From Gracilinanus agilis (taxonomy: Eukaryota), in contig NC_058130.1 in assembly GCF_016433145.1 (NCBI RefSeq), forward strand, positions 45,002,834 to 45,066,833: 64,000 nt of DNA, in the 5' to 3' direction. Below are positions 870 through 49,764 of this stretch, piece by piece. The notes beneath the pieces were generated by a model. It ran no database searches. It saw only the letters and a list, made by a program, of their open reading frames with translations, and had not been told where the DNA came from. The translations under genes and the position numbers were made by a program. The stretch's first letter is position 1. Each line of letters starts with the position of its first letter.

Positions 870-1055
870 ACAGGAGCTCTTCTAGTACTCGGTGAATGGT
901 TTTAATTATTTTTACTTCAGTTTAATTTCATTGGTTCCTTGTATAAGTGTGTGTATGTTTCATGCATTTAAAAACATGATTCTCAGAAGGGATCCATAGG
1001 CTTTACCAAATTCCCTACCTGGTCCATGAAAGTAAAAGGGTAGAAACCCATGTCC
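870..1055. mobile_element. Ancient hAT-type DNA transposon terminal fragment (MER/MamRep class)
   Basis: tgcatttaaaaacatgattctcagaagggatccataggc..ggtccatga..aaagggtagaaaccc resembles recalled hAT termini. Exact family not assigned. Confidence 0.5.
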
Positions 1056-1318
1056 TTGAACCAATTTGGGGATGAGTCTCTGAATTAGCTGGAATGACGT
1101 TGTATCCTGTATTCAAAGCTTTTTTTTCACCTTGGGAAAATTGTAATTAAGATAGTACAAGAGAGCCTTTTCCCCAGGGGGCAGAATTTAGAGGGTGCCC
1201 TTTGTCAGAGCAGAAAAAGCAGAGTATTACACTCAATTTGTATGAATAACCATTTTAAATAATATGCTACTAAATGACATGCTGGAGTCACCTCCTTCTT
1301 CTCTCAGTGCCCTCTCCC

Positions 1319-1426
1319 CAGCTAGTGCCCTTGATCTTCTGTCTTGTCAAGAAGTGTCCTATTCCTTTTTTTCCCCTTGGGAATAGGACACTTCTTGATA
1401 AGACAGAAAATTAGGGGAACTAGCTG
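1319..1426 (+). ncRNA. Long near-perfect hairpin (candidate miRNA/hpRNA precursor or palindromic repeat remnant)
   Basis: Arms 1319-1365 and 1380-1426 pair with no bulge: 42 Watson-Crick, 3 G-U, 2 mismatches; 14-nt loop. The structure is certain; its function is unproven. Confidence 0.45.
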
Positions 1427-2169
1427 ATTGGTCAAATGTATAGTACTTGCTCCCAGTTCAGAAATGCCTAGGTAGCCCTCTTCCTCTTGATAAGACTTAC
1501 AAGAGTTTATTTTCTGTAGGAGTAACCTTTGCAAACTCAAGTGCACCCCCACATAAACAATGAAACATGTCTTTGATGCCTGGATACATCAGACATATCT
1601 TTAAAGATAATTTAAAAATATATAAGGATTTGTGATTTCATAAAGATAGAGACTCTGAATAAAGGATTTCTTTTCCCTGTGTGTAGATCAATACATTCTA
1701 GGCAGCTTAGAACCTCAGATAGCTGCCTGTGTCATGGAGCTATAATGTGACTTATACGAAGTCACACAACCTGTTTCCCAAAAGCAGAACTTGAAACCAG
1801 TTCTTCTGTAATCTGAATCCAGCTCTCTATCCAGATGTGATACATGTTTCTTCCTGTGACACTGAAAGAGTAATTGGCTTATTGAGAGACTTGAAAGCAA
1901 TGACACTAAACAAGACAGAGGTGTAACATCTTAGAGAAGGCAGAGATCTGAATTTCAGACTCTTGAAGGGGAAACGATTTGGTCACAATCAAAGACCTAT
2001 GTAGTATTGGAGTGTGGCCATAGACTATGGTCCCTGGAGCCTGGTCTAGTCCTGTTTCTATCAGATGCCACAATAGAACTGAGAGAATTCTTAACATTTT
2101 ACCTTTCTGATCTTCAGAAATATTTCATGTATTAATAGATTATTAATTACATTTGTGTTGTGTGCCAGT

Positions 2170-2366
2170 GTGTTAGAGGAAGAGAAAGAAAAGGGAAGAA
2201 AAGAGAAAGAGAGGAGAAAAAAGGAGGAAGAGGAAATAAGGTTAAGGAAGAGAGGAGAGGGAGAGAGAGACAGACAGAGGGAGACAGAGAGAGTCAGAGA
2301 CAGAGAGAGAGAAAATGAAAGAGAGAGACAGAAATTGTAAAAAAGAGACAGAGACAGACAGAGATA
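2170..2366. repeat. Polypurine (GA-rich) simple repeat
   Basis: AGG/GAGA/GACA units. Explains spurious ORFs 2155..2340 and 2091..2372. Confidence 0.9.
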
Positions 2367-4498
2367 AGTCATAAGGGCTATTTTGGAGCATCAACTCATC
2401 CATAAATCAGGCTAGAAAATACATTTTCCACCTTTATTTTTATCTGCTCCTTTTTTCAACAACTTTATCTTATATCTTTTTTATATTTTTATTTTTAATG
2501 ACAGTGTACTTTTAAGTTTTTTTTAATATTAGGGCTTCATTGGTCAGTGGACTAAATTCCTGGAGAGAGCACACCATTCGAATTCCCTTGCTCAATAGTA
2601 AGAATGATCAAAATAAGGGAAAGACAATTATTTTGAAGATTCTAACTCTATTACCCCTTCATTTAATAACTTATTGCCCCTTCAGTTTGCTATCAAACTT
2701 TGGATGGGTTGCCATTTTAACCCCTAAACGACAGCTCTACAATTGCTGTAGTTCATAATTACGTAGATATAAATTGAAAGCTCAGGAAAGCTAATATTTT
2801 AATCCCACAGAAGCAATTTTGTTGGCCTGCAAAATAGTACCTGGAGTTCTAGGATTTTTTTCTTTCTTTTTTTTCACTTTCAGAGGATCTCAACATTGAA
2901 TTTAAAAATATGTCAGAGCTCCTTTCGGGGCAAAAACATCTGCTAGAGTAATCTAATAAAAGAAAATCAGGTAAAGATGAGGTCTTTGACATATGCACTG
3001 CTGTAACTATACTTGAACAGCTCCAACCAGGTTTCTTTAGACATATTGTTAGCTGGAACAGTTTCGTGTGGAAATAGCAGTTGGAGAGGGGCAGCCACCA
3101 TCTTCCTAGGGGATTATCCTGCTTGCCCTGAATCACCCCAGGAGCCATGTGTAAAGTGGTCCTTTCATTCTTTCTTTTTTATTATGCATTATACATATGA
3201 GCTACAGGCTGATCTCTCTTCCCTGAGCCATGTAGCAGGACTTCCAAACTTGGGCTCAGGTATGAATCTGATGATCTTAGCCCTAGAAATCTAAATCATT
3301 TATATTTCTATTGAAGCAATTTTTCCTTGAAATTGGAGAAGAAAGGGAGATAAGATGCCAGCAGGAATATAATTTTATTTTTAAAAAATATTTCTCTTCA
3401 TGATCCCCCTTCTCTGATCTACTTCCTCCTGGGTTGATTCTAAGCTGCCCATGCACACCAGCAATGTTCTTTCTTAATCTAATCCCTTCTTATCTCTCTT
3501 ACCATTTTTAACCTAAACTATGACCTATTATGTTTTCTTGAATGGTCCTTGGAATTCTCAGTATGCATCATATCCTTACCAGTAGCTGGTAGTGCCTTCT
3601 TTAATGCCCGATCTATAACAACTTACTCAGCGGAGATAATAAATCTTCCCAAAAAGCAAAGGCAGTGATTTGGGTCTATAGGGAGCATCACCAAATTTAG
3701 CTAGCCTGGTCTGTCTGGAGCCATCTTATCAAAGCACAAGCAAAGGGCTTGGTGCTCTGGGGACCCTGCTGGAGAGATTGACCACACTAGGGAGTTACAA
3801 TGGATTATAGACCCATACCTTTCAACAATATGGCTTGATTTTAACCATTAGCACAATAATAATAATGACAATGATAACAACATTTTTATATAGATAGATA
3901 TTTTTTCTTTGTGACCAAAGTAGAGTACCATATACACATTTAATGAATCATTCAATGTAAATTGTCTTCTTTTATGAACTCAGGCAAAAACATCCTCTTC
4001 ATTCAAAAATATACTGCTGTATAATATGATACATCTTGTTTTAAGGAAGAGATTCTGGATATCTATGTCAGGCTATGAGACTATAGCTAGCTCTACTCTC
4101 CAAATAATGTTATAGACATGTATAATTGGAAAAAGGTGCTAAATTTCAGGTGGAGGATATTAAAAATAAAGATATAATTTTTTCCCTATGAAAGTTCAAG
4201 GACTCCCTTAAATCTATTCACATATTCCTTGATTAAACCTCTAATATCAGAGGTAGGGGAATTAGGGAAGAAAGATATATGAGCAAGTTTTGTTTGTCTG
4301 GCTCAGAGGTAGATAAAAGATTAGTCACAAACTTGCCTTTCCTGTTCTGTTAACTTTGGCAATAGTTGCTTTGAATTTTGGAAACACTGGTTTAAAGATT
4401 TGATGACGAAGATTTCCTGTTCATTCATGGCCCCTTTGTAAGGTCTGCTGTCGAGTAGGATCCTGACCCATCCAGATTAATTGTTTTGTTTTGCTTAA

Positions 4499-6080: not shown

Positions 6081-7898
6081 CCACTGAGACTGATTGTGAA
6101 GTGAAGCAGCCACACACAATACTTTTACATCTATCCAGCTCACTTTGCTCAAATAGAAATAGATTAACTGTGAGCCGAATTAAAACATGCCAGTGCTAGA
6201 TGGCATACACTGAAGTATTTTCTAGCTCGTTATCTTTATCTCTGCTCTCATTTTTAGCCTAGGTTATCACCAGTTGGATAGCTATGGTTAGTGCTACCAA
6301 AAGCCACAGTTCCTAAAAATGACATATCCATTTTTTTGTTACTTTGAACTGGGGCTGATTTTTTAAAAATTGATTTCCCATCCATAATCAGGTAAGTGAC
6401 CTTAAATCAAAGTAACTTGATGCAAGTTATCAGCACTGCCCTGGAAAATATGCAAACTCTGTATTCTTTTTAAAAATACCAAATAATTTGAGCATTAAAG
6501 GTAAATAATAGTTGATCATTATATCTACAAGATTACAGAAAGGCAGAATAATATGAGAGCTACAGAGCTGGTCTTAGCAAAAAGACCACTGTTTAGTGCT
6601 TGTCTTTGGCATATGATGGCCATAGGACCAAATTCAATAACTTCACTCCTCCTTATTCCATATAGCTCTCTAGTACTCTCTGTTTTAGGAGATCTTCCCA
6701 AATATCCCTGAGGTGCATCTGTAAAGTATTTTAAAAACTCAAATCCATATATAAATATTTGCATATTATAAATCATAACATTATTAGCAAGAATGTCTTT
6801 TGGAAGACAGAAAGCTAGCCCTAATGACAGGAAGGCCATATTTAAGTCCTCTATCTATTTTATTCTGAACAAATTGTGTAACTTCTTATTGCCCTAGGAA
6901 ATTGTCAACACTATAAATTATAGAAATGGTACAGATTTGCCTTGATAGAAGAAGTTTCATCTTCTGGAAATTCTGAATATCATTGAAATAGCAGAATCCC
7001 TATCAGTATCTCCCCCAAGAACCCATAAATAATCACCTAAGAATTATTTTGGAATTAAGCATCACCTAATATATGACCATAGATTTGAAGATAAAAAAGA
7101 CTCTAACGGCCTTAAATCCAAACCCATCTTGTTACAGATAAGGAAACTGAGGCACAAGGAAATTAAGCTATTCACAATCTATTTTTAATTTTTAATTTAT
7201 GTATGCGTAATTATTTTCTTCCCAACCAGCATGAAAACTACTTATGGGTAGGAATTGTTTCATATATATTTTCAGTACCTAGCAAATTACAGGGCATTTA
7301 ATAAATAGAAACTGATTCATTAAATGATTGCTAGATAATAATTGCCAGAATTCTGACTAGAATCTAGAAAATCTTGTGCCAAATCTAATATCCTTATAGC
7401 ACAAAATACTGCCTCCCTAAAATATCAATGCTGATCCCCTAAAATAAAATTTTATTATATTTTACTTTTTTATATAAAATAGAAATTCAAAAAGCATTCT
7501 AAAAGTATTCATATTTAATGTTGTAGAGATGATGACATAGGTTAATTGTACCAATGTACCTGGGCATACCTGATGCACAGTTAGTACCTTCCAATATATA
7601 GTACATATAGTTCATGGGAAAAAAATTATTCATGCTTCTTTTGTACAAGATCAAACAAGAGAAAACTAACTCACAAGGGGTTATTTTGAGAAAAATGGGA
7701 AGAAATTTACATTTTGTATACAATTAATAATCTTAAGTGTTTTGAACTGCAATACATATCCAAGAGGTAAAAAAATAAGTTTTGATTTTCTTGGTTGCAA
7801 ATAAGACTAGAAAATAAAGAAAAATGACTTTGAACATGTTTAACCAATTGTGGTTTAAATTCTGAGAAAGCTAGAATTAACAGCAAGATTTCTTTTGG

Positions 7899-7915
7899 AC
7901 ACACACACACATACA

Positions 7916-7982
<67 letters not shown>
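7899..7982. repeat. (CA)n followed by (TA)n microsatellite
   Basis: Direct reading. Source of the CVCVCV run in ORF 7707..8177. Confidence 0.97.
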
Positions 7983-8574
7983 AGAATCTTTCACAAAATT
8001 GGTATGATATGGATGTTGATGTAAAATATATGAGAATATCTGATGTATACTTTTAGGACACATATTGATCAGTGTCTGGACACAACAAAATAAAACATGT
8101 TGAAATAAGGAAAAGGGATAGAAGATGGAAACTCCTGGAAAGGTCCTTACATGGAGAATCAAGGGAGAGGAACTCATTATATCTCTGAACTATCAAAGGT
8201 TTGAAATTAGAAAATCATAGCATGTCAAGCCTGCAAGAGACCTTATAAAATATCAAGACTAATCCCTTCTTTAACAGATGAGGAAACTGATAGCCCATTG
8301 GTCAGTGGATCTTACTTGCTTCAGTGCTCAGGATCTCAGTTCTTTACAGTTCATCAGTAGTTTGTTTTTTAATTTCTAAAATGGGCATAAACTCCATCTT
8401 CTTTCTTAACTATAAGTACATGAGATTTGTTGTGAAGATCTTTTGAACAAATGACTAGAAAGTGTTAATTTAAAAAAAGCTATTTTATTTTTTCATTTCT
8501 TCTCTATGTGAAATAACTAAATCTTCAGTGAAAATCTCAATGTTAAACATAACAACAAACAGGAGATAAATATT

Positions 8575-8760
8575 TGACTCCTTATAGAATCATACATTTT
8601 GAGTTAGGAGGAAATTTAGAGAGTATTAAATTAAACCCCCTCATCTTACAGATAAGAAAATTTCCTCCCAGAGAAACTTAAATGACCTGACTAAGGTCAC
8701 ATAGGTTGTGAGTTTAAGAGGTGGGATTTGAATACTGGACTTTGGACTCCAAATAAAGTT
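8575..8760 (-). mobile_element. MIR/CORE-SINE
   Basis: cccctcatcttacagataagaaaat..aaatgacctgactaaggtcacatag..gggatttgaa, the antisense MIR core. Confidence 0.75.
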
Positions 8761-9849
8761 CTCTTTCTGTCTCTCCACATTCCCATTTCCCTCCCCACTC
8801 AACTTTAAGAAATAAAATATTAACAAAATTGGCAAATTAAAAGATGATTATTCATTCTACAAAAGGAATAATTTACAAATTGATATCTTATGAGATTACT
8901 CAATATAGCCACCTGTTCTGATATTATTAAATTAAAATATAATTTATAAGAATTCTATTTGCCTGCTATTTTTCAGAAGCTTATACCTTCTTAAAAATGA
9001 GGCCTGCTCACTATATCACATGCAATATCTAAATTTCAAGTTTTATTTTATATGTTTCGATGCCTATATGTGTACACCTGTTCATGTACACATATATTAA
9101 AGCTAGATTTTTTTAAAATCAGCCTCTAATTTACTCATGACATTTGTAACAAGGGATGGTAACAAATATGTTGTTTCAAATATTCTTCAGTGATACTAGA
9201 TAATAATTCTTATTTGAACTTTTCTGAATGGAAATCATAAAATTATAACCCCCAACAATTATTTTCTGTAATTTCCAGTGGTGAGTTTCTGCTGAGGCAT
9301 TTTGGCATTGATGTCCCAAGAGTTACGGGTCTCCTGAGACCAATTACAAAGGTTCAGAAGGTTGTTTTTATTTCCCTTGCTCCTGATGCCTTTTTAATGA
9401 GGCCTCCCAGTAAACAGAAAGTATGATGCTTTCCTGTTGTATTCCTGTCTGCCGCCTTCAAACATTTATTACTAATACAGCTGGGAAATGATTTATAAAT
9501 TAAATATTAGGAAAATGTACTTTAGGAAAAAAAGTAGTTAGGGGATATAATTTATAATTCTCATTTAGGGGAAAATCATGCCAGTAGTTTGCTAATGGAA
9601 GTGTGCTGAGAGTCGCTCTTGGAAACTCTGCAGTGGTTTATGTAATAAATAGAGATAATAGATGAGGGGGAGTTTGCAGTGGATGTATTTGGGCATGTGG
9701 TTCGTTCTAATAAAATGTGAACATAAAAGAAGCCAATTTGTTTTTAGACTGACCTATAGAATATTGGGGAAAATAATAAGATAAAAGAAAAACTACTTCT
9801 AAGGGCTGAGTGATACCTCAGAAGACTTTTTGCAGTAAACAAAGTCCAT

Positions 9850-37190: not shown

Positions 37191-38264
37191 ACTTGGCCTT
37201 CTTAAATCTAGTTAGAACATTTTTACTTCCTCTGCCTATGTATGAGTGGATGTGTGTCTTTGTATTTGCAGAATGATCTCTTTGGCATTTCTAATATCTT
37301 ATCCAAAAATTATAAATTCCTGCACTGATCTTGGTCAAGGATGGCATTCCTAACTCAGAGCCTGACTAATGCTACAGGAAAACAGTGTGATGTCCTTTCC
37401 ATCTCTTCATGCATTCCCTAAATATTTTTTAACATTGTACTTTCCGAAGTTCCATTTCTTTCTATCTGCCTCACAATTAGTTACATGACTCATTATTTTT
37501 TTTCTTAAATTTGTACAAAATTGTATGTCTATGGTCCCAGTTATATAATCCCAAATCATTTTAAAGATGGAGTTCCATTGATTAATGGAACCTATTTTAA
37601 AGTAATTGCCTTCATTATGTAAGAACAATTTTGTTAGAATTAATCAAAAGTGAGGGTGACCAGGTCCTTCCTTGGATCAATAAGAGCCATTGAATGATAG
37701 ACTTAATCACATCCTAAGGAATTAAAGGAAGAAGATAGGGCCTATAACTGGACAGGCAGGAGCAGTGTTAAAGTTGGCCAGTAGAAGAGGAGGGAGATAT
37801 GGAGGGAGATCATTTGCTCTACAGACTTCTCTAGAGCAAAAACTCAGGCAGAGAAAAGTCCAAAGTAATGTCAGACTCTCCCAGTTTCCCCTATTGGTGC
37901 CTATCTATTCACAGACCATTATAATAAAAAATGCTGTTCAGTTGCCAAAAAGTTTCCAAGAAAGCTCAATTTTGCTACATCTATAAGAGGTAGATATAAA
38001 TGTAAACAAAGATTGTTCAAAGTAATAAAATGGGAGATTCTTCCAACACTTTTGCACAAGTTCAGGCTATATAAGGAATTTACACCCTCTTGACCTTCAT
38101 CTCTTAGAATGTTTACCTTTTTCCAATTCAGTTTATGTGTCATCTATTATAGAAATCCTTTCCTGATGCCTCTGAAGTTAGTATTTTTTGATTTGAAAAA
38201 TTGAACAAAGATGTCAATCTCTGCCTAAATGTCTGGAATTTTCCTAACTGGGAACTCAAAGATC

Positions 38265-38468
38265 ATTATAAAAGTTATAAAAATTATAAATTATAAAATT
38301 ATAAATTTAAGTATACATACTTTCATTATTCTATATTTAATTAATTAAATTATAGATTATATGATTTAACTAAATTATATAGTATAATTTAACTAATTAA
38401 ATTATATTGTATATAATTTAAATATATAATTTTAAATATATAAATTATAAAAGTTATAAAAATTATAA
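38265..38468. repeat. AT-rich low-complexity tract bounded by a perfect 25-bp direct repeat
   Basis: ATTATAAAAGTTATAAAAATTATAA at 38265-38289 and 38444-38468. Confidence 0.9.
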
Positions 38469-38494
38469 CTTTTTCATCTGAAATAAATACCATA

Positions 38495-38695: not shown

Positions 38696-40194
38696 ACAAC
38701 ATAAAATACCCTAATGCTAAAAAAAAGTAACAATCTGGACCTTTGGGAGCAGTATGTGCCTTTAGATTGACTTTATATTGTAGGAATTTAACTTTTCTGG
38801 TCTATTTCAATAAGCATTCATTAAGCTTTTGCTATCTGTCAAACTTTCCATCCTACTGGGGGTGATACAATATATGAACAAGGAACTATATACCTGATCA
38901 TTTGAAGAGAAGGAAAAAAAATACTATCTGCAGAGGCATCAGGAAAGGATTTCTATAATAGATGACACATAAACTGAATTGGAAAAAGGTAGACATTCTA
39001 AGTGATGAAGGTCAAGAGGGTATAAATTCCATATATAGCCTGAACTTGTGCAAAGGTGTTGGAAGAATCTCCCATTTTATTACTTTGCAAACCCTTTTAA
39101 ATTGAGGCATACAATGTGCCTGAAATTTCAGTTTGGGTGTTTTAAAGTATTTTAGTTACATGTAGATATTTTTAAAATATGAAAATACATTCCATTTGCA
39201 AACCTCTTTCACCTTTTCTCTGCTTTCTACTGGAATTCACACTTAACTCCAAATGTTACACAGGCTAGGACCTAATATTTATCTTACTAACCGTCTCAGA
39301 TATATTTTAAGAGCAATGAGTTTCTCAGTCATCATTTCTAATGAGCAAAGAGGAGACACAAACCTAACTCTCAGAATGCTTAATTGGGCTTTTTCGTGAT
39401 TTGTGGTCAGGAATCACTTGAGCGGAGGAAAAAGTTGAGCCCAAATCAATGATGAGTACACTTTTTACGCATAATTTTAGAAAATAAAAATTCTAGAAGC
39501 CTAGCCAGATTGCCTCCCTGAAACATGAATGTGAAGAGAATGAAAATAATATTTGCATTTCCATTAAAGGGGCAAAATCAATTTATTCCTTTTTTCCTCA
39601 AAAACGTGGTAAATGGATGTTTGTCATGGGTCTAGATGTAGATGTTATGCAAAACCCTTTATAGTGTGAAATTTACAACATGTATCTGCAAAGTGACATA
39701 AAAAACATTCACTGTGATTTGAGAGCGACTCAATTATATCTGCGCCTTTTGCAGGCTTTTCTTTTCTTTCTTTATTTTCTTGAGTCTTTACAAATAACAT
39801 TTCACATATGGATGGCAATGGGCTTAGAGCTAAGAAAGTTGACTCTTGCCAGGTCTATGTGATGCGAATTGAAGCATTCAGGGTAATTCAGCATACAGAA
39901 CTGGTATTTGCCTCTTACATATTGATATTTTAAATGAAATCATCATTTACTTTCTATATGATTGCTTCAAATTTTACTCTTTTACAGCCCCCACTCCACA
40001 TTTCTCCCATTTGCTTGTGTTGACTATTTAGAAGTAAAGCTAGAGTTAGCCTTATTTGGACCTCTGTGGCTTCACTGCTTCAGGGTGATGGGGTTCTGGT
40101 AGGATTTGGACATTCCGCTTCAAGGAAGGAGCTCAGGGGAATAAAAGCACACCAGTTATTTAAAATCTCTCTTTTTCTCCTGAGTCTTGCATAG

Positions 40195-48167: not shown

Positions 48168-49764
48168 CATTTGCTGTTGGTGGGACCATTAAATAGATAT
48201 ATATCTATTTAATGGTCTCAATATGTAATATATACATATTAAAGAAGTCAGGAATCCAGTGTGAGAGGTGGTACATTGTGGTTAGACAGCTGACCCTGAA
48301 TTTATAGAATGGTAAGACCATAGCACTAGAGCTGAAAAGGACCCTAGAGCCAAAGAAGTCAAACTCTCTAATTATAGAAATGAGGAAACTGAGGTCGGTA
48401 GATGACATACCCAAAAGTCACACAAAGAAAGTAAGTCTGAGAAGTGGGATTGGACCTCAGGTTGGCAGATTCCAAAGTCAGTGCTTGACCTAAGGCATTA
48501 AGCCTCATCTCTGACAAAATATTGGGGTGGATGACCATGGGCAAGTCTCTTAATCATGTGGCACCCCAGGCAACTCCATATAAGTTGTAGAAGATCTACC
48601 TATCTGTGATGGCAAAGAGATTTTTTTATTATGGAAGTTTCTCATACTGCTGAAAAAGGTCCAAGAAAAACTAAAATTAAATTAAAATCTATAAATGATC
48701 TTGTCTGTTAGAATCTGATAAGATCACTGACATATACTTCTAAAAATTAGTCTTCACTGATATGATTGTCAGCATTTCTCCCTCATAGATCGTCCCTTCT
48801 AGCTTCAGGTCAGGAGCCACCTGCTAGATGCTGACCTCTTTCTGGATACGCTCTACTCCCATGTTCCCAGGGCCAAACACAACTGACAGTATAAAATAGG
48901 ACAGGCAACAGCTAGTATCTGCCAAGCATGAGTTTTCCACACTGCTAGCTAGTGCCACTCCTGCTGGCATTCTGATCTCCAAGCCTCTGGACTTGGCCTT
49001 CCTAGACCTATGCTGCCTGTTTGTACCTCCCATGGTCATTAAATGATTTCCATTGTTGTGTCTTTTTGTATCTTTCATCTTTGATACCTATGAAAATGTT
49101 ACTTAGCCATTTCTTTGCCCTTCCACCAACTTAGTTCTACATATGTGTCTCAGTTTCTAGATCCCTAAAAACTGGATCAATCTATATATATTAAAAAAAA
49201 AACATGATGAATAACCTGTCCTACATTTACCGGAAACCGTAACAACACAGGACACAAAAACTGAGTTTGTTCACCCAAATATGTTTTTTATTTGGATTTC
49301 ATTTTTTTCCATTAATTAATTTTTGGGGGCTGGTTACTTTGATATTCTCTTAATTTTCCCCCTAAATCTTAGAGGTAAGGAGTTTGTAATGGCCAGTTCC
49401 AATTTTCAGGAATGAGCTTAATTGAAGATGTTTGTCATATTTGGATTCAGAACTCCTTATCCTTCAGTGAGCCTCATCAAACAGGAACCTGCCTCCTGTG
49501 GTAGATGACAATGATGGTTACAAGGACTTATATTCAATAAAATAAAAGAAGTGAGCTCCCAGTAAAAATATCATGGAGGAACCACACCTTCTGGTTTCTA
49601 ATGCTTTGGGCATTTTTATTAGCTTACACAAAACTTTGTCTGGCATGCCAGCTTAGGGCATAGAAATGGTCACTGATGTTCACTGGATTTTATTAGAGGA
49701 ATGAACTTCGGAGGCCATGTGTGGATTTACATCCAAGCTAGAAATTTAAATATGTCCCCTTCAA

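What the first reader, a model, noticed from the sequence alone, without database searches (positions are those of the whole stretch)
1319..1426. Bulge-free 47-bp hairpin in unique sequence: candidate unannotated miRNA/hpRNA locus
Seen: position i pairs with 2745-i throughout (1319-1365 with 1380-1426), giving 42 WC pairs, 3 G-U and 2 mismatches around a 14-nt pyrimidine loop. The inner 29 bp (TTCTGTCTTGTCAAGAAGTGTCCTATTCC) have a single G-U. It lies outside any repeat I recognise. Three non-WC positions are G-U on the plus strand versus one on the minus strand, weakly favouring a plus-strand RNA. Knowledge: canonical pri-miRNA stems are ~35 bp, so this is slightly long, and fold-back duplications or palindromic DNA-transposon relics are a known source of young miRNAs. 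Inference: a marsupial-specific small-RNA precursor, a cruciform-forming palindrome, or a MITE relic.
Basis: partly seen in the sequence, partly recalled or inferred. Interest (0 to 1): 0.7.

Follow-up and report, generated by a model that had tools for sequence, protein, structure and literature searches.

The report
Single-copy fold-back hairpin, probably a copying error
A real 47-base-pair hairpin sits in unique DNA of this opossum-like genome. It looks like a one-off replication error that wrote a neighbouring stretch backwards, and nothing available here shows that it makes a microRNA.

Summary
Arms 1319-1365 and 1380-1426 pair without gaps: 42 Watson-Crick pairs, 3 G-U and 2 mismatches on the + strand, around a 14-nt pyrimidine loop. 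The fold is far beyond chance (RNA z = -12.4 on +, -9.5 on -).

- **Not a repeat family.** At 80% likeness or more, a second read set covers the hairpin with one contig at single-copy depth. A repeat fragment 300 bp upstream piles up hundreds-fold in the same run. No target-site duplication abuts the arms, so a MITE is unlikely.
- **No sign of a microRNA.** No Rfam family reaches its threshold. The stem is about 12 bp longer than the 35-bp optimum. The basal UG, apical UGU and a well-placed CNNC are absent on both strands. The window has no CpG island and no recognisable gene. The one polymorphism seen (G1415A) breaks a pair without compensation. The 3:1 G-U strand bias is not significant.
- **Best reading (about 0.7).** This is a lineage-specific inverted duplication made by replication template switching, now drifting neutrally. 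Composition suggests the 3' arm is the inserted copy.
- **What was not tested.** No RNA run was available, so expression is untested. In primates about 1% of such hairpins are annotated miRNA loci.

Earlier follow-ups in this scan reached the same class for two other hairpins in this genome.

The parts
1319..1365 (+). 5' arm of the inverted repeat (47 nt). Probably the original sequence, since it continues the pyrimidine-rich tract that starts at about 1271.
   Evidence: Searches give the pair table. One search gives 64% pyrimidine, like the 5' flank (69%) and the loop (93%).
1366..1379 (+). 14-nt loop TTTTTTTCCCCTTG. A U1366-G1379 pair can shorten it to 12 nt in RNA. The T7 run would stop RNA polymerase III on the + strand.
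   Evidence: Sequence; folds.
1380..1426 (+). 3' arm (47 nt). Probably the inserted reverse-complement copy: purine-rich and a compositional break from its surroundings. It carries the polymorphic site 1415 (G in the window, A in run X1).
   Evidence: One search gives 34% pyrimidine against 70% for 1271-1379. table 3 shows the G1415A change.
1271..1379 (+). Pyrimidine-rich tract (70% C+T, in the top 1.4% of 109-nt windows in the 64 kb). It holds the 5' flank, the 5' arm and the loop, and ends exactly where the 3' arm begins. This is context used to guess which arm is the copy.

Best explanation
The hairpin is a single-copy, lineage-specific inverted duplication. During replication or repair of a pyrimidine-rich stretch, the growing strand left its template and copied about 47 nt of the adjacent sequence backwards. 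It either folded back on itself or used the opposite strand, then returned to the correct template. This is a template-switch mutation, and it creates both arms of a gapless hairpin in one event.

The 3' arm (1380-1426) is probably the new copy. Since then the arms have picked up five point differences (four transitions and one transversion), and one more is segregating. That pattern fits neutral drift. Both strands would fold if transcribed, and the duplex could in principle feed Drosha or Dicer, but nothing here indicates that it does.

Shown: the structure, its sharp ends, its uniqueness, the lack of a target-site duplication, and the lack of any family match. Inferred: the template-switch mechanism, which arm is the copy, the age, and the lack of function.
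For: - **Anatomy.** Pairing is gapless (i pairs with 2745-i) over 47 bp, and it drops abruptly to random outside 1319/1426.
- **Copy number.** There is no second copy in the window. In run X1, at 80% likeness or more, one contig spans the hairpin at depth 24.1. The same run piles up to depth 7,700-9,000 on a 55-nt repeat piece at 958-1012, so short repeats would have been detected.
- **No insertion signature.** No direct repeat of any length abuts the arms.
- **Polarity.** The pyrimidine tract 1271-1379 ends exactly at the start of the purine-rich 3' arm.
- **Drift.** The five arm differences are mostly transitions. G1415A in X1 turns C1330-G1415 into C-A with no change at 1330. One difference in 108 nt matches the flank rate of 7 in 1,138 nt.
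- **Published mechanism.** Template switching makes whole perfect hairpins in one step. More than 31,000 new RNA stems and 6,054 miRNA-sized ones were inferred in genic regions of the primate lineage (PMC10710096).
- **Other inverted copies nearby.** The same window holds a 182-nt pair at 38008/38916 and a 40-bp palindrome at 48181.
Against: No outgroup sequence lacking the copy could be obtained. The defining test of a template-switch mutation, ancestral state against derived state, was therefore not run.

Organism B (runs X2, X3) has no contig at 80% or more over the whole unique region 1029-1545, so it says nothing either way.

The differences cluster in the outer 18 bp (4 of 5, hypergeometric p = 0.06). 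This could mean selection or conversion keeps the inner 29 bp paired, or it could be chance. No RNA data were available, so lack of function is assumed from indirect signs and base rates.
Confidence: 0.7

Rival explanations
1. The hairpin is a young, lineage-specific small-RNA gene. It is transcribed by RNA polymerase II as part of a longer RNA and cut by Drosha/Dicer, or by Dicer alone as an endogenous short hairpin. It yields 21-23-nt RNAs. This is compatible with a template-switch birth.
For: The hairpin is very stable on both strands, with a loop of 12-14 nt. Generic sub-threshold matches to miRNA covariance models reflect hairpin shape only: MIR7504 scores 44.8 bits against a gathering score of 83, and mir-605 scores 39.9 against 98. 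Template-switch hairpins are a documented source of new miRNAs, including 18 MirGeneDB genes in primates.
Against: - No Rfam family reaches threshold, and the arm 17-mers appear in no searchable paper.
- The stem is 47-48 bp against a strong preference for 35 bp.
- There is no basal UG and no apical UGU/GUG. The only CNNC is 24 nt (+) or 32 nt (-) beyond the stem.
- The 64 kb holds no CpG island, its CpG observed/expected ratio is 0.10, the ten longest ORFs have no Pfam domain, and no host gene was recognised.
- The segregating G1415A change breaks a pair.
- Only 0.9% of suitable template-switch hairpins in genic regions are miRBase loci.
- No RNA run holds the locus. That is weak evidence, because few runs are served.
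Confidence: 0.06
2. The hairpin is a relic of a short palindromic DNA transposon (MITE), consisting almost entirely of its two terminal inverted repeats.
For: The size (108 bp) and architecture resemble MADE1-type MITEs. The arms begin with CAG, as many hAT ends do; this is from memory and was not tested against Dfam.
Against: The element is single copy at 80% likeness or more in a roughly 24x read set that readily shows other repeats. Arms only about 10% apart imply a young element, so sibling copies should be at least about 85% alike and visible. No TA, TTAA, 3-bp, 8-bp or other direct repeat flanks the arms. There is no other copy in 64 kb.
Confidence: 0.05
3. The hairpin works as a DNA element. 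It would be a cruciform-forming palindrome that binds a protein, or that affects replication or recombination.
For: The single-stranded DNA fold is -39 kcal/mol, z -12.4.
Against: A 14-nt spacer disfavours cruciform extrusion; this is general knowledge and was not tested. The palindrome is intact in two data sets with no deletion or rearrangement joint. The arms are accumulating mismatches. The setting is AT-rich, CpG-poor and gene-poor.
Confidence: 0.03

Closest known systems
Template-switch mutation (TSM) hairpins (Loytynoja and Goldman 2017, from memory; Monttinen et al. 2023, PMC10710096)
   Same: A gapless reverse-complement copy of immediately adjacent sequence, longer than the 15-nt minimum used in that work. 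It creates a complete near-perfect stem in unique sequence with sharp ends and no insertion signature, and it gathers point mutations afterwards.
   Different: The ancestral, pre-event state is not available here, so the event is inferred from anatomy alone. At 47 nt the copy is longer than the 28-nt example described for hsa-mir-4713, though events of up to 83 nt are reported in that paper.
TSM-born young miRNA genes such as hsa-mir-4713, hsa-mir-576 and mmu-mir-3086
   Same: The same kind of hairpin origin, and lineage-restricted.
   Different: Those genes have small-RNA read stacks, and 89% lie in introns or near promoters. Here no expression data, host gene or promoter could be shown, and the stem exceeds the 35-bp optimum.
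MADE1-type palindromic MITEs (source of the miR-548 family; from memory)
   Same: A hairpin of about 80-110 bp made of two long inverted repeats and a short loop.
   Different: MITEs are multi-copy and flanked by target-site duplications. This element is single copy and has none.
Two other hairpins in this genome judged template-switch products by earlier follow-ups (s1-153909 at the S100A13 locus, s1-153817 in P3H1 intron 4)
   Same: Near-perfect inverted repeats of 60-70 bp scale in unique sequence of the same genome. The same conclusion was reached and no function was shown.
   Different: Those lie in or next to named genes, and one was reported absent from five other marsupials. Here no gene context or outgroup could be obtained. 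These are unchecked AI notes, not independent evidence.

Membership tests
Animal miRNA precursor | Small-RNA reads of about 22 nt in precise 5p/3p stacks with 2-nt 3' overhangs | not testable with these tools
Animal miRNA precursor | Stem of about 35 bp with an unstructured apical loop of 10 nt or more | tested here: inconclusive
   The loop of 12-14 nt fits. The stem of 47-48 bp is about 12 bp too long and has no bulges (the 35-bp preference is quoted in PMC10710096).
Animal miRNA precursor | Membership of a described miRNA family (covariance model at or above the gathering score) | tested here: not met
   The best Rfam hits are MIR7504 at 44.8 bits (gathering 83), MIR8007 at 43.5 (195) and mir-605 at 39.9 (98). 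The whole window gives 0 hits at gathering threshold. miRBase and MirGeneDB themselves could not be searched.
Animal miRNA precursor | Microprocessor-enhancing motifs (basal UG, apical UGU/GUG, CNNC about 17 nt past the cut); these are supportive rather than obligatory | tested here: not met
   None is in position on either strand. The nearest CNNC lies 24 nt (+) or 32 nt (-) beyond the stem end.
Animal miRNA precursor | Conservation of pairing in relatives through compensatory change | tested here: inconclusive
   The only comparison is run X1. G1415A breaks C1330-G1415 without compensation. Organism B has no alignable locus.
MITE / palindromic DNA-transposon relic | Many dispersed copies in the genome | tested here: not met
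   One contig at single-copy depth 24.1 over 1217-1592 at 80% likeness or more, against depth 7,700-9,000 over the repeat at 935-1028. No further copy in the window.
MITE / palindromic DNA-transposon relic | Target-site duplication flanking the terminal inverted repeats | tested here: not met
   The flanks are ...CCTCTCCC and ATTGGTCA..., with no direct repeat of 2-8 bp abutting the arms. The only 5-mers found lie 23 or more nt away.
MITE / palindromic DNA-transposon relic | Terminal sequence matching a known transposon superfamily consensus | not testable with these tools
   No Dfam or Repbase library is available.
Template-switch mutation (inverted templated duplication) | An inverted fragment of 15 nt or more that is the gapless reverse complement of nearby sequence | tested here: met
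   47 nt, 42 WC pairs plus 5 later differences, 14 nt from its template.
Template-switch mutation (inverted templated duplication) | Parent/child comparison: the ancestral sequence lacks the inverted copy, and one event explains a cluster of 5 or more differences | not testable with these tools
   No outgroup locus was obtained. Organism B is not alignable, and the metagenome scan for the arm found nothing.
Template-switch mutation (inverted templated duplication) | Unique, non-repeat, non-low-complexity context | tested here: met
   Single-copy depth. The arms are complex sequence, and no tandem or simple repeat is involved.

The most novel reading that the evidence does not exclude
The hairpin is a species- or genus-specific small-RNA gene caught soon after its birth by template switching. 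It would be a 47-bp, almost bulge-free duplex processed mainly by Dicer (endogenous short-hairpin or siRNA-like) and not as a canonical miRNA, in a marsupial. The outer stem would be decaying freely while the inner 29 bp are kept paired.
Probability: 0.04. Interest if true: 0.45.

Novelty: new member of a known kind. Interest (0 to 1): 0.15.

Why it matters
Taken as read here, this is one more example of a common mutation class. Template switching supplies ready-made hairpins, the raw material from which a small minority of new miRNAs arise. Its value is mainly as a catalogue entry. Together with two earlier cases in this genome and two further inverted copies in this window, it suggests such events are frequent in this marsupial. 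A genome-wide census could then be compared with the primate figures. It would matter more only if small-RNA data showed processing.

Tried and rejected
- **Rfam.** Searches at permissive and gathering thresholds gave only sub-threshold, shape-driven matches to unrelated miRNA families, including plant ones. These were rejected as homology.
- **Literature.** A full-text search for 17-mers of both arms, as RNA and as DNA, gave 0 papers. The supplements of the two main opossum miRNA papers (PMC3530682, PMC5741053) are not held as text, so no comparison with published opossum miRNA lists was possible.
- **Metagenome contigs.** A scan for the arm, in the hope of host contamination from relatives, gave 0 hits.
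- **Gene context.** The ten longest ORFs of the window have no Pfam domain, and there is no CpG island. Earlier scan notes give no gene for this window. The host gene is therefore unknown.
- **Bacterial-type promoter/terminator scan.** Irrelevant to a mammalian genome; it found nothing.
- **Organism B runs.** No alignable locus. A 990-to-1609 joint in one contig each has only 24 letters on its shorter side and no cover beyond. It was treated as a repeat copy, not as an empty orthologous site.
- **G-U strand bias as evidence for a + strand RNA.** Rejected, p = 0.63.
- **Assembly artefact.** Rejected, because an independent contig with 7 differences from the window spans the hairpin.

Full report
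**Observation**

The repeat finder reports arms 1319-1365 and 1380-1426, 47 nt, 89% complementary, 14 nt apart. A position-by-position table gives 42 Watson-Crick pairs, three G-U pairs (1331/1414, 1333/1412, 1346/1399) and two mismatches (G1327/A1418, C1336/A1409) on the + strand. The - strand has one G-U and four mismatches. The inner 29 bp contain a single G-U.

Outside 1319/1426, complementarity falls at once to background: 2 of the next 18 symmetric positions pair.

| Fold | Strand | MFE (kcal/mol) | z-score |
|---|---|---|---|
| RNA, 1300-1445 (146 nt) | + | -78.7 | -12.35 |
| RNA, 1300-1445 (146 nt) | - | -67.8 | -9.49 |
| DNA, hairpin alone | + | -39 | -12.4 |

The helix also survives intact in a 600-nt context. 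In the whole 64 kb it is the only tight hairpin of complex sequence, apart from a 40-bp spacer-less palindrome at 48181-48220.

**Is it a repeat?**

No. The 29-nt core occurs only in the two arms, allowing up to 3 mismatches. A sensitive self-BLAST of 1050-1800 against the window finds only the hairpin's own self-match.

The one DNA holder among public runs is X1 (organism A, about 24x). It was laid on 700-2100 at 80% likeness or more. A single contig (record 8) spans 963-2100 with 7 substitutions and 1 indel, and depth over 1217-1592 is 24.1 throughout, which is the single-copy level. The same run stacks to depth 7,700-9,000 on a 55-nt repeat piece at 958-1012. Short repeated pieces are therefore detected when they exist.

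This shows three things:
- The palindrome is not an artefact of the reference assembly.
- It is present in a second, non-identical genome copy.
- It has no siblings at 80% or more.

The arms differ from each other by only about 10%. Sibling copies of a transposon family of that age would be well above 80% alike, so a MITE is unlikely. No target-site duplication of any length abuts the arms: the flanks are ...CCTCTCCC and ATTGGTCA....

**Is it a known or likely small-RNA gene?**

- **Family matches.** Rfam 15 gives only sub-threshold, shape-driven matches: MIR7504 at 44.8 bits against a gathering score of 83, MIR8007 at 43.5 against 195, and mir-605 at 39.9 against 98. The whole window has no match at gathering threshold.
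- **Literature.** Arm 17-mers occur in no searchable paper. The supplements of the two main opossum miRNA surveys are not held. miRBase and MirGeneDB were therefore not really tested.
- **Stem length.** The stem is 47-48 bp with no bulge, against a strong preference for a 35-bp stem (PMC10710096).
- **Processing motifs.** Neither strand has a basal UG, an apical UGU/GUG or a CNNC at the expected distance.
- **Polymerase III.** On the + strand the loop holds a T7 run, which would terminate RNA polymerase III.
- **Genomic setting.** The window has no CpG island (193 CpG observed against 1,911 expected), 31-39% G+C, and no Pfam domain in its ten longest ORFs. No promoter or host gene can be named.
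- **Polymorphism.** The only difference inside the hairpin, G1415A in X1, turns the C1330-G1415 pair into C-A with nothing changed at 1330. One difference in 108 nt equals the flank rate of 7 in 1,138.
- **Strand bias.** Three of four transition differences falling on one strand gives two-sided p = 0.63.
- **Expression.** No RNA run holds the locus. That is weak evidence, since few runs are served and short RNAs are easily lost. Expression is therefore untested.

**How it most likely arose**

A gapless reverse-complement copy with sharp ends, 14 nt from its template, in unique sequence and without an insertion signature, is the anatomy expected of a template-switch mutation. The nascent strand leaves its template, is extended briefly on itself or on the opposite strand, and then returns. 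This writes both arms of a perfect hairpin in one event (PMC10710096, Fig. 1 legend).

Composition gives a hint of polarity. Positions 1271-1379 (5' flank, 5' arm and loop) form a 70% pyrimidine tract, in the top 1.4% of 109-nt windows in the 64 kb. The tract ends exactly where the 34%-pyrimidine 3' arm starts. The 3' arm is therefore probably the inserted copy.

The five arm differences (K = 0.115) correspond to roughly 8-56 million years at 2.2e-9 per site per year. That rate is from memory, and the interval is Poisson only. The estimate would be wrong if the copy was imperfect from the start, or if conversion homogenises the arms.

Four of the five differences lie in the outer 18 bp (hypergeometric p = 0.06). 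This is not significant, but it is the one feature that could hint at maintenance of the inner stem.

**Comparison with what is known**

In the primate lineage, 53,666 putative template-switch events were inferred in genic regions. Of these, 31,007 created a new RNA stem and 6,054 were of miRNA size. Only 0.9% of those 6,054 are annotated miRNA loci, and these are strongly enriched in sense-strand introns or near promoters.

That base rate, combined with the negative indicators above, puts the small-RNA-gene reading at about 5%. Earlier follow-ups in this scan reached the same class for two other hairpins in this genome (s1-153909, s1-153817). Those are unchecked AI notes. They show only that the kind recurs, not that this case is right.

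**Limits**

The defining test of a template-switch event was not possible, because no outgroup lacking the copy could be obtained. Organism B (X2, X3) has no contig at 80% or more over 1029-1545, and a metagenome scan found nothing. Dfam, miRBase, MirGeneDB, genome annotation and small-RNA reads were not available.

**Verdict**

This is an ordinary new instance of a known mutation class, and interest is low.

Noticed in passing
window 38008-38189 and 38916-39097: A 182-nt inverted repeat, 94-96% complementary, with arms 726 nt apart. The arms have no other copy in the window. The spacer holds interspersed-repeat matches and its own internal inverted structure at about 38270-38473.
   Followed up: partly
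window 48181-48220: A spacer-less 40-bp palindrome (GGGACCATTAAATAGATATA / TATCTATTTAATGGTCTC), 96-97% self-complementary and unique in the window. It may be another small inverted copying event.
   Followed up: partly
window 935-1028 (core 958-1012), perhaps diverged to about 1055: A fragment of a high-copy interspersed repeat. Summed contig depth is 7,700-9,000 against 24 for single-copy sequence in X1. It is equally abundant in organism B (X2, X3), so the family is shared by both species. The family was not identified because no Dfam library is available.
   Followed up: no
window 1306-1313 and 1324-1331: The 8-mer AGTGCCCT occurs in the 5' flank and again inside the 5' arm. Two of the five arm differences (1327, 1331) fall in the second copy. 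This may be a later micro-conversion or slippage, or chance.
   Followed up: no
window 990 / 1609 (runs X2, X3): One contig in each organism-B run joins 990 to 1609, skipping 618 nt that include the hairpin. Only 24 letters lie on the shorter side and 1640-1780 is not covered. It is probably a repeat copy and not an empty orthologous site.
   Followed up: no
whole window: Extreme CpG depletion (193 observed against 1,911 expected, ratio 0.10), 31-39% G+C, no CpG island, no Rfam family at threshold, and no Pfam domain in the ten longest ORFs. The window looks like a gene-poor or deep-intronic AT-rich region.
   Followed up: partly
window 2160-2380 and 463-534: A purine-rich GA/GACA low-complexity tract (2160-2380) and a TA/TG simple repeat (463-534). 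The second accounts for several of the 'inverted repeats' listed near the finding.
   Followed up: no
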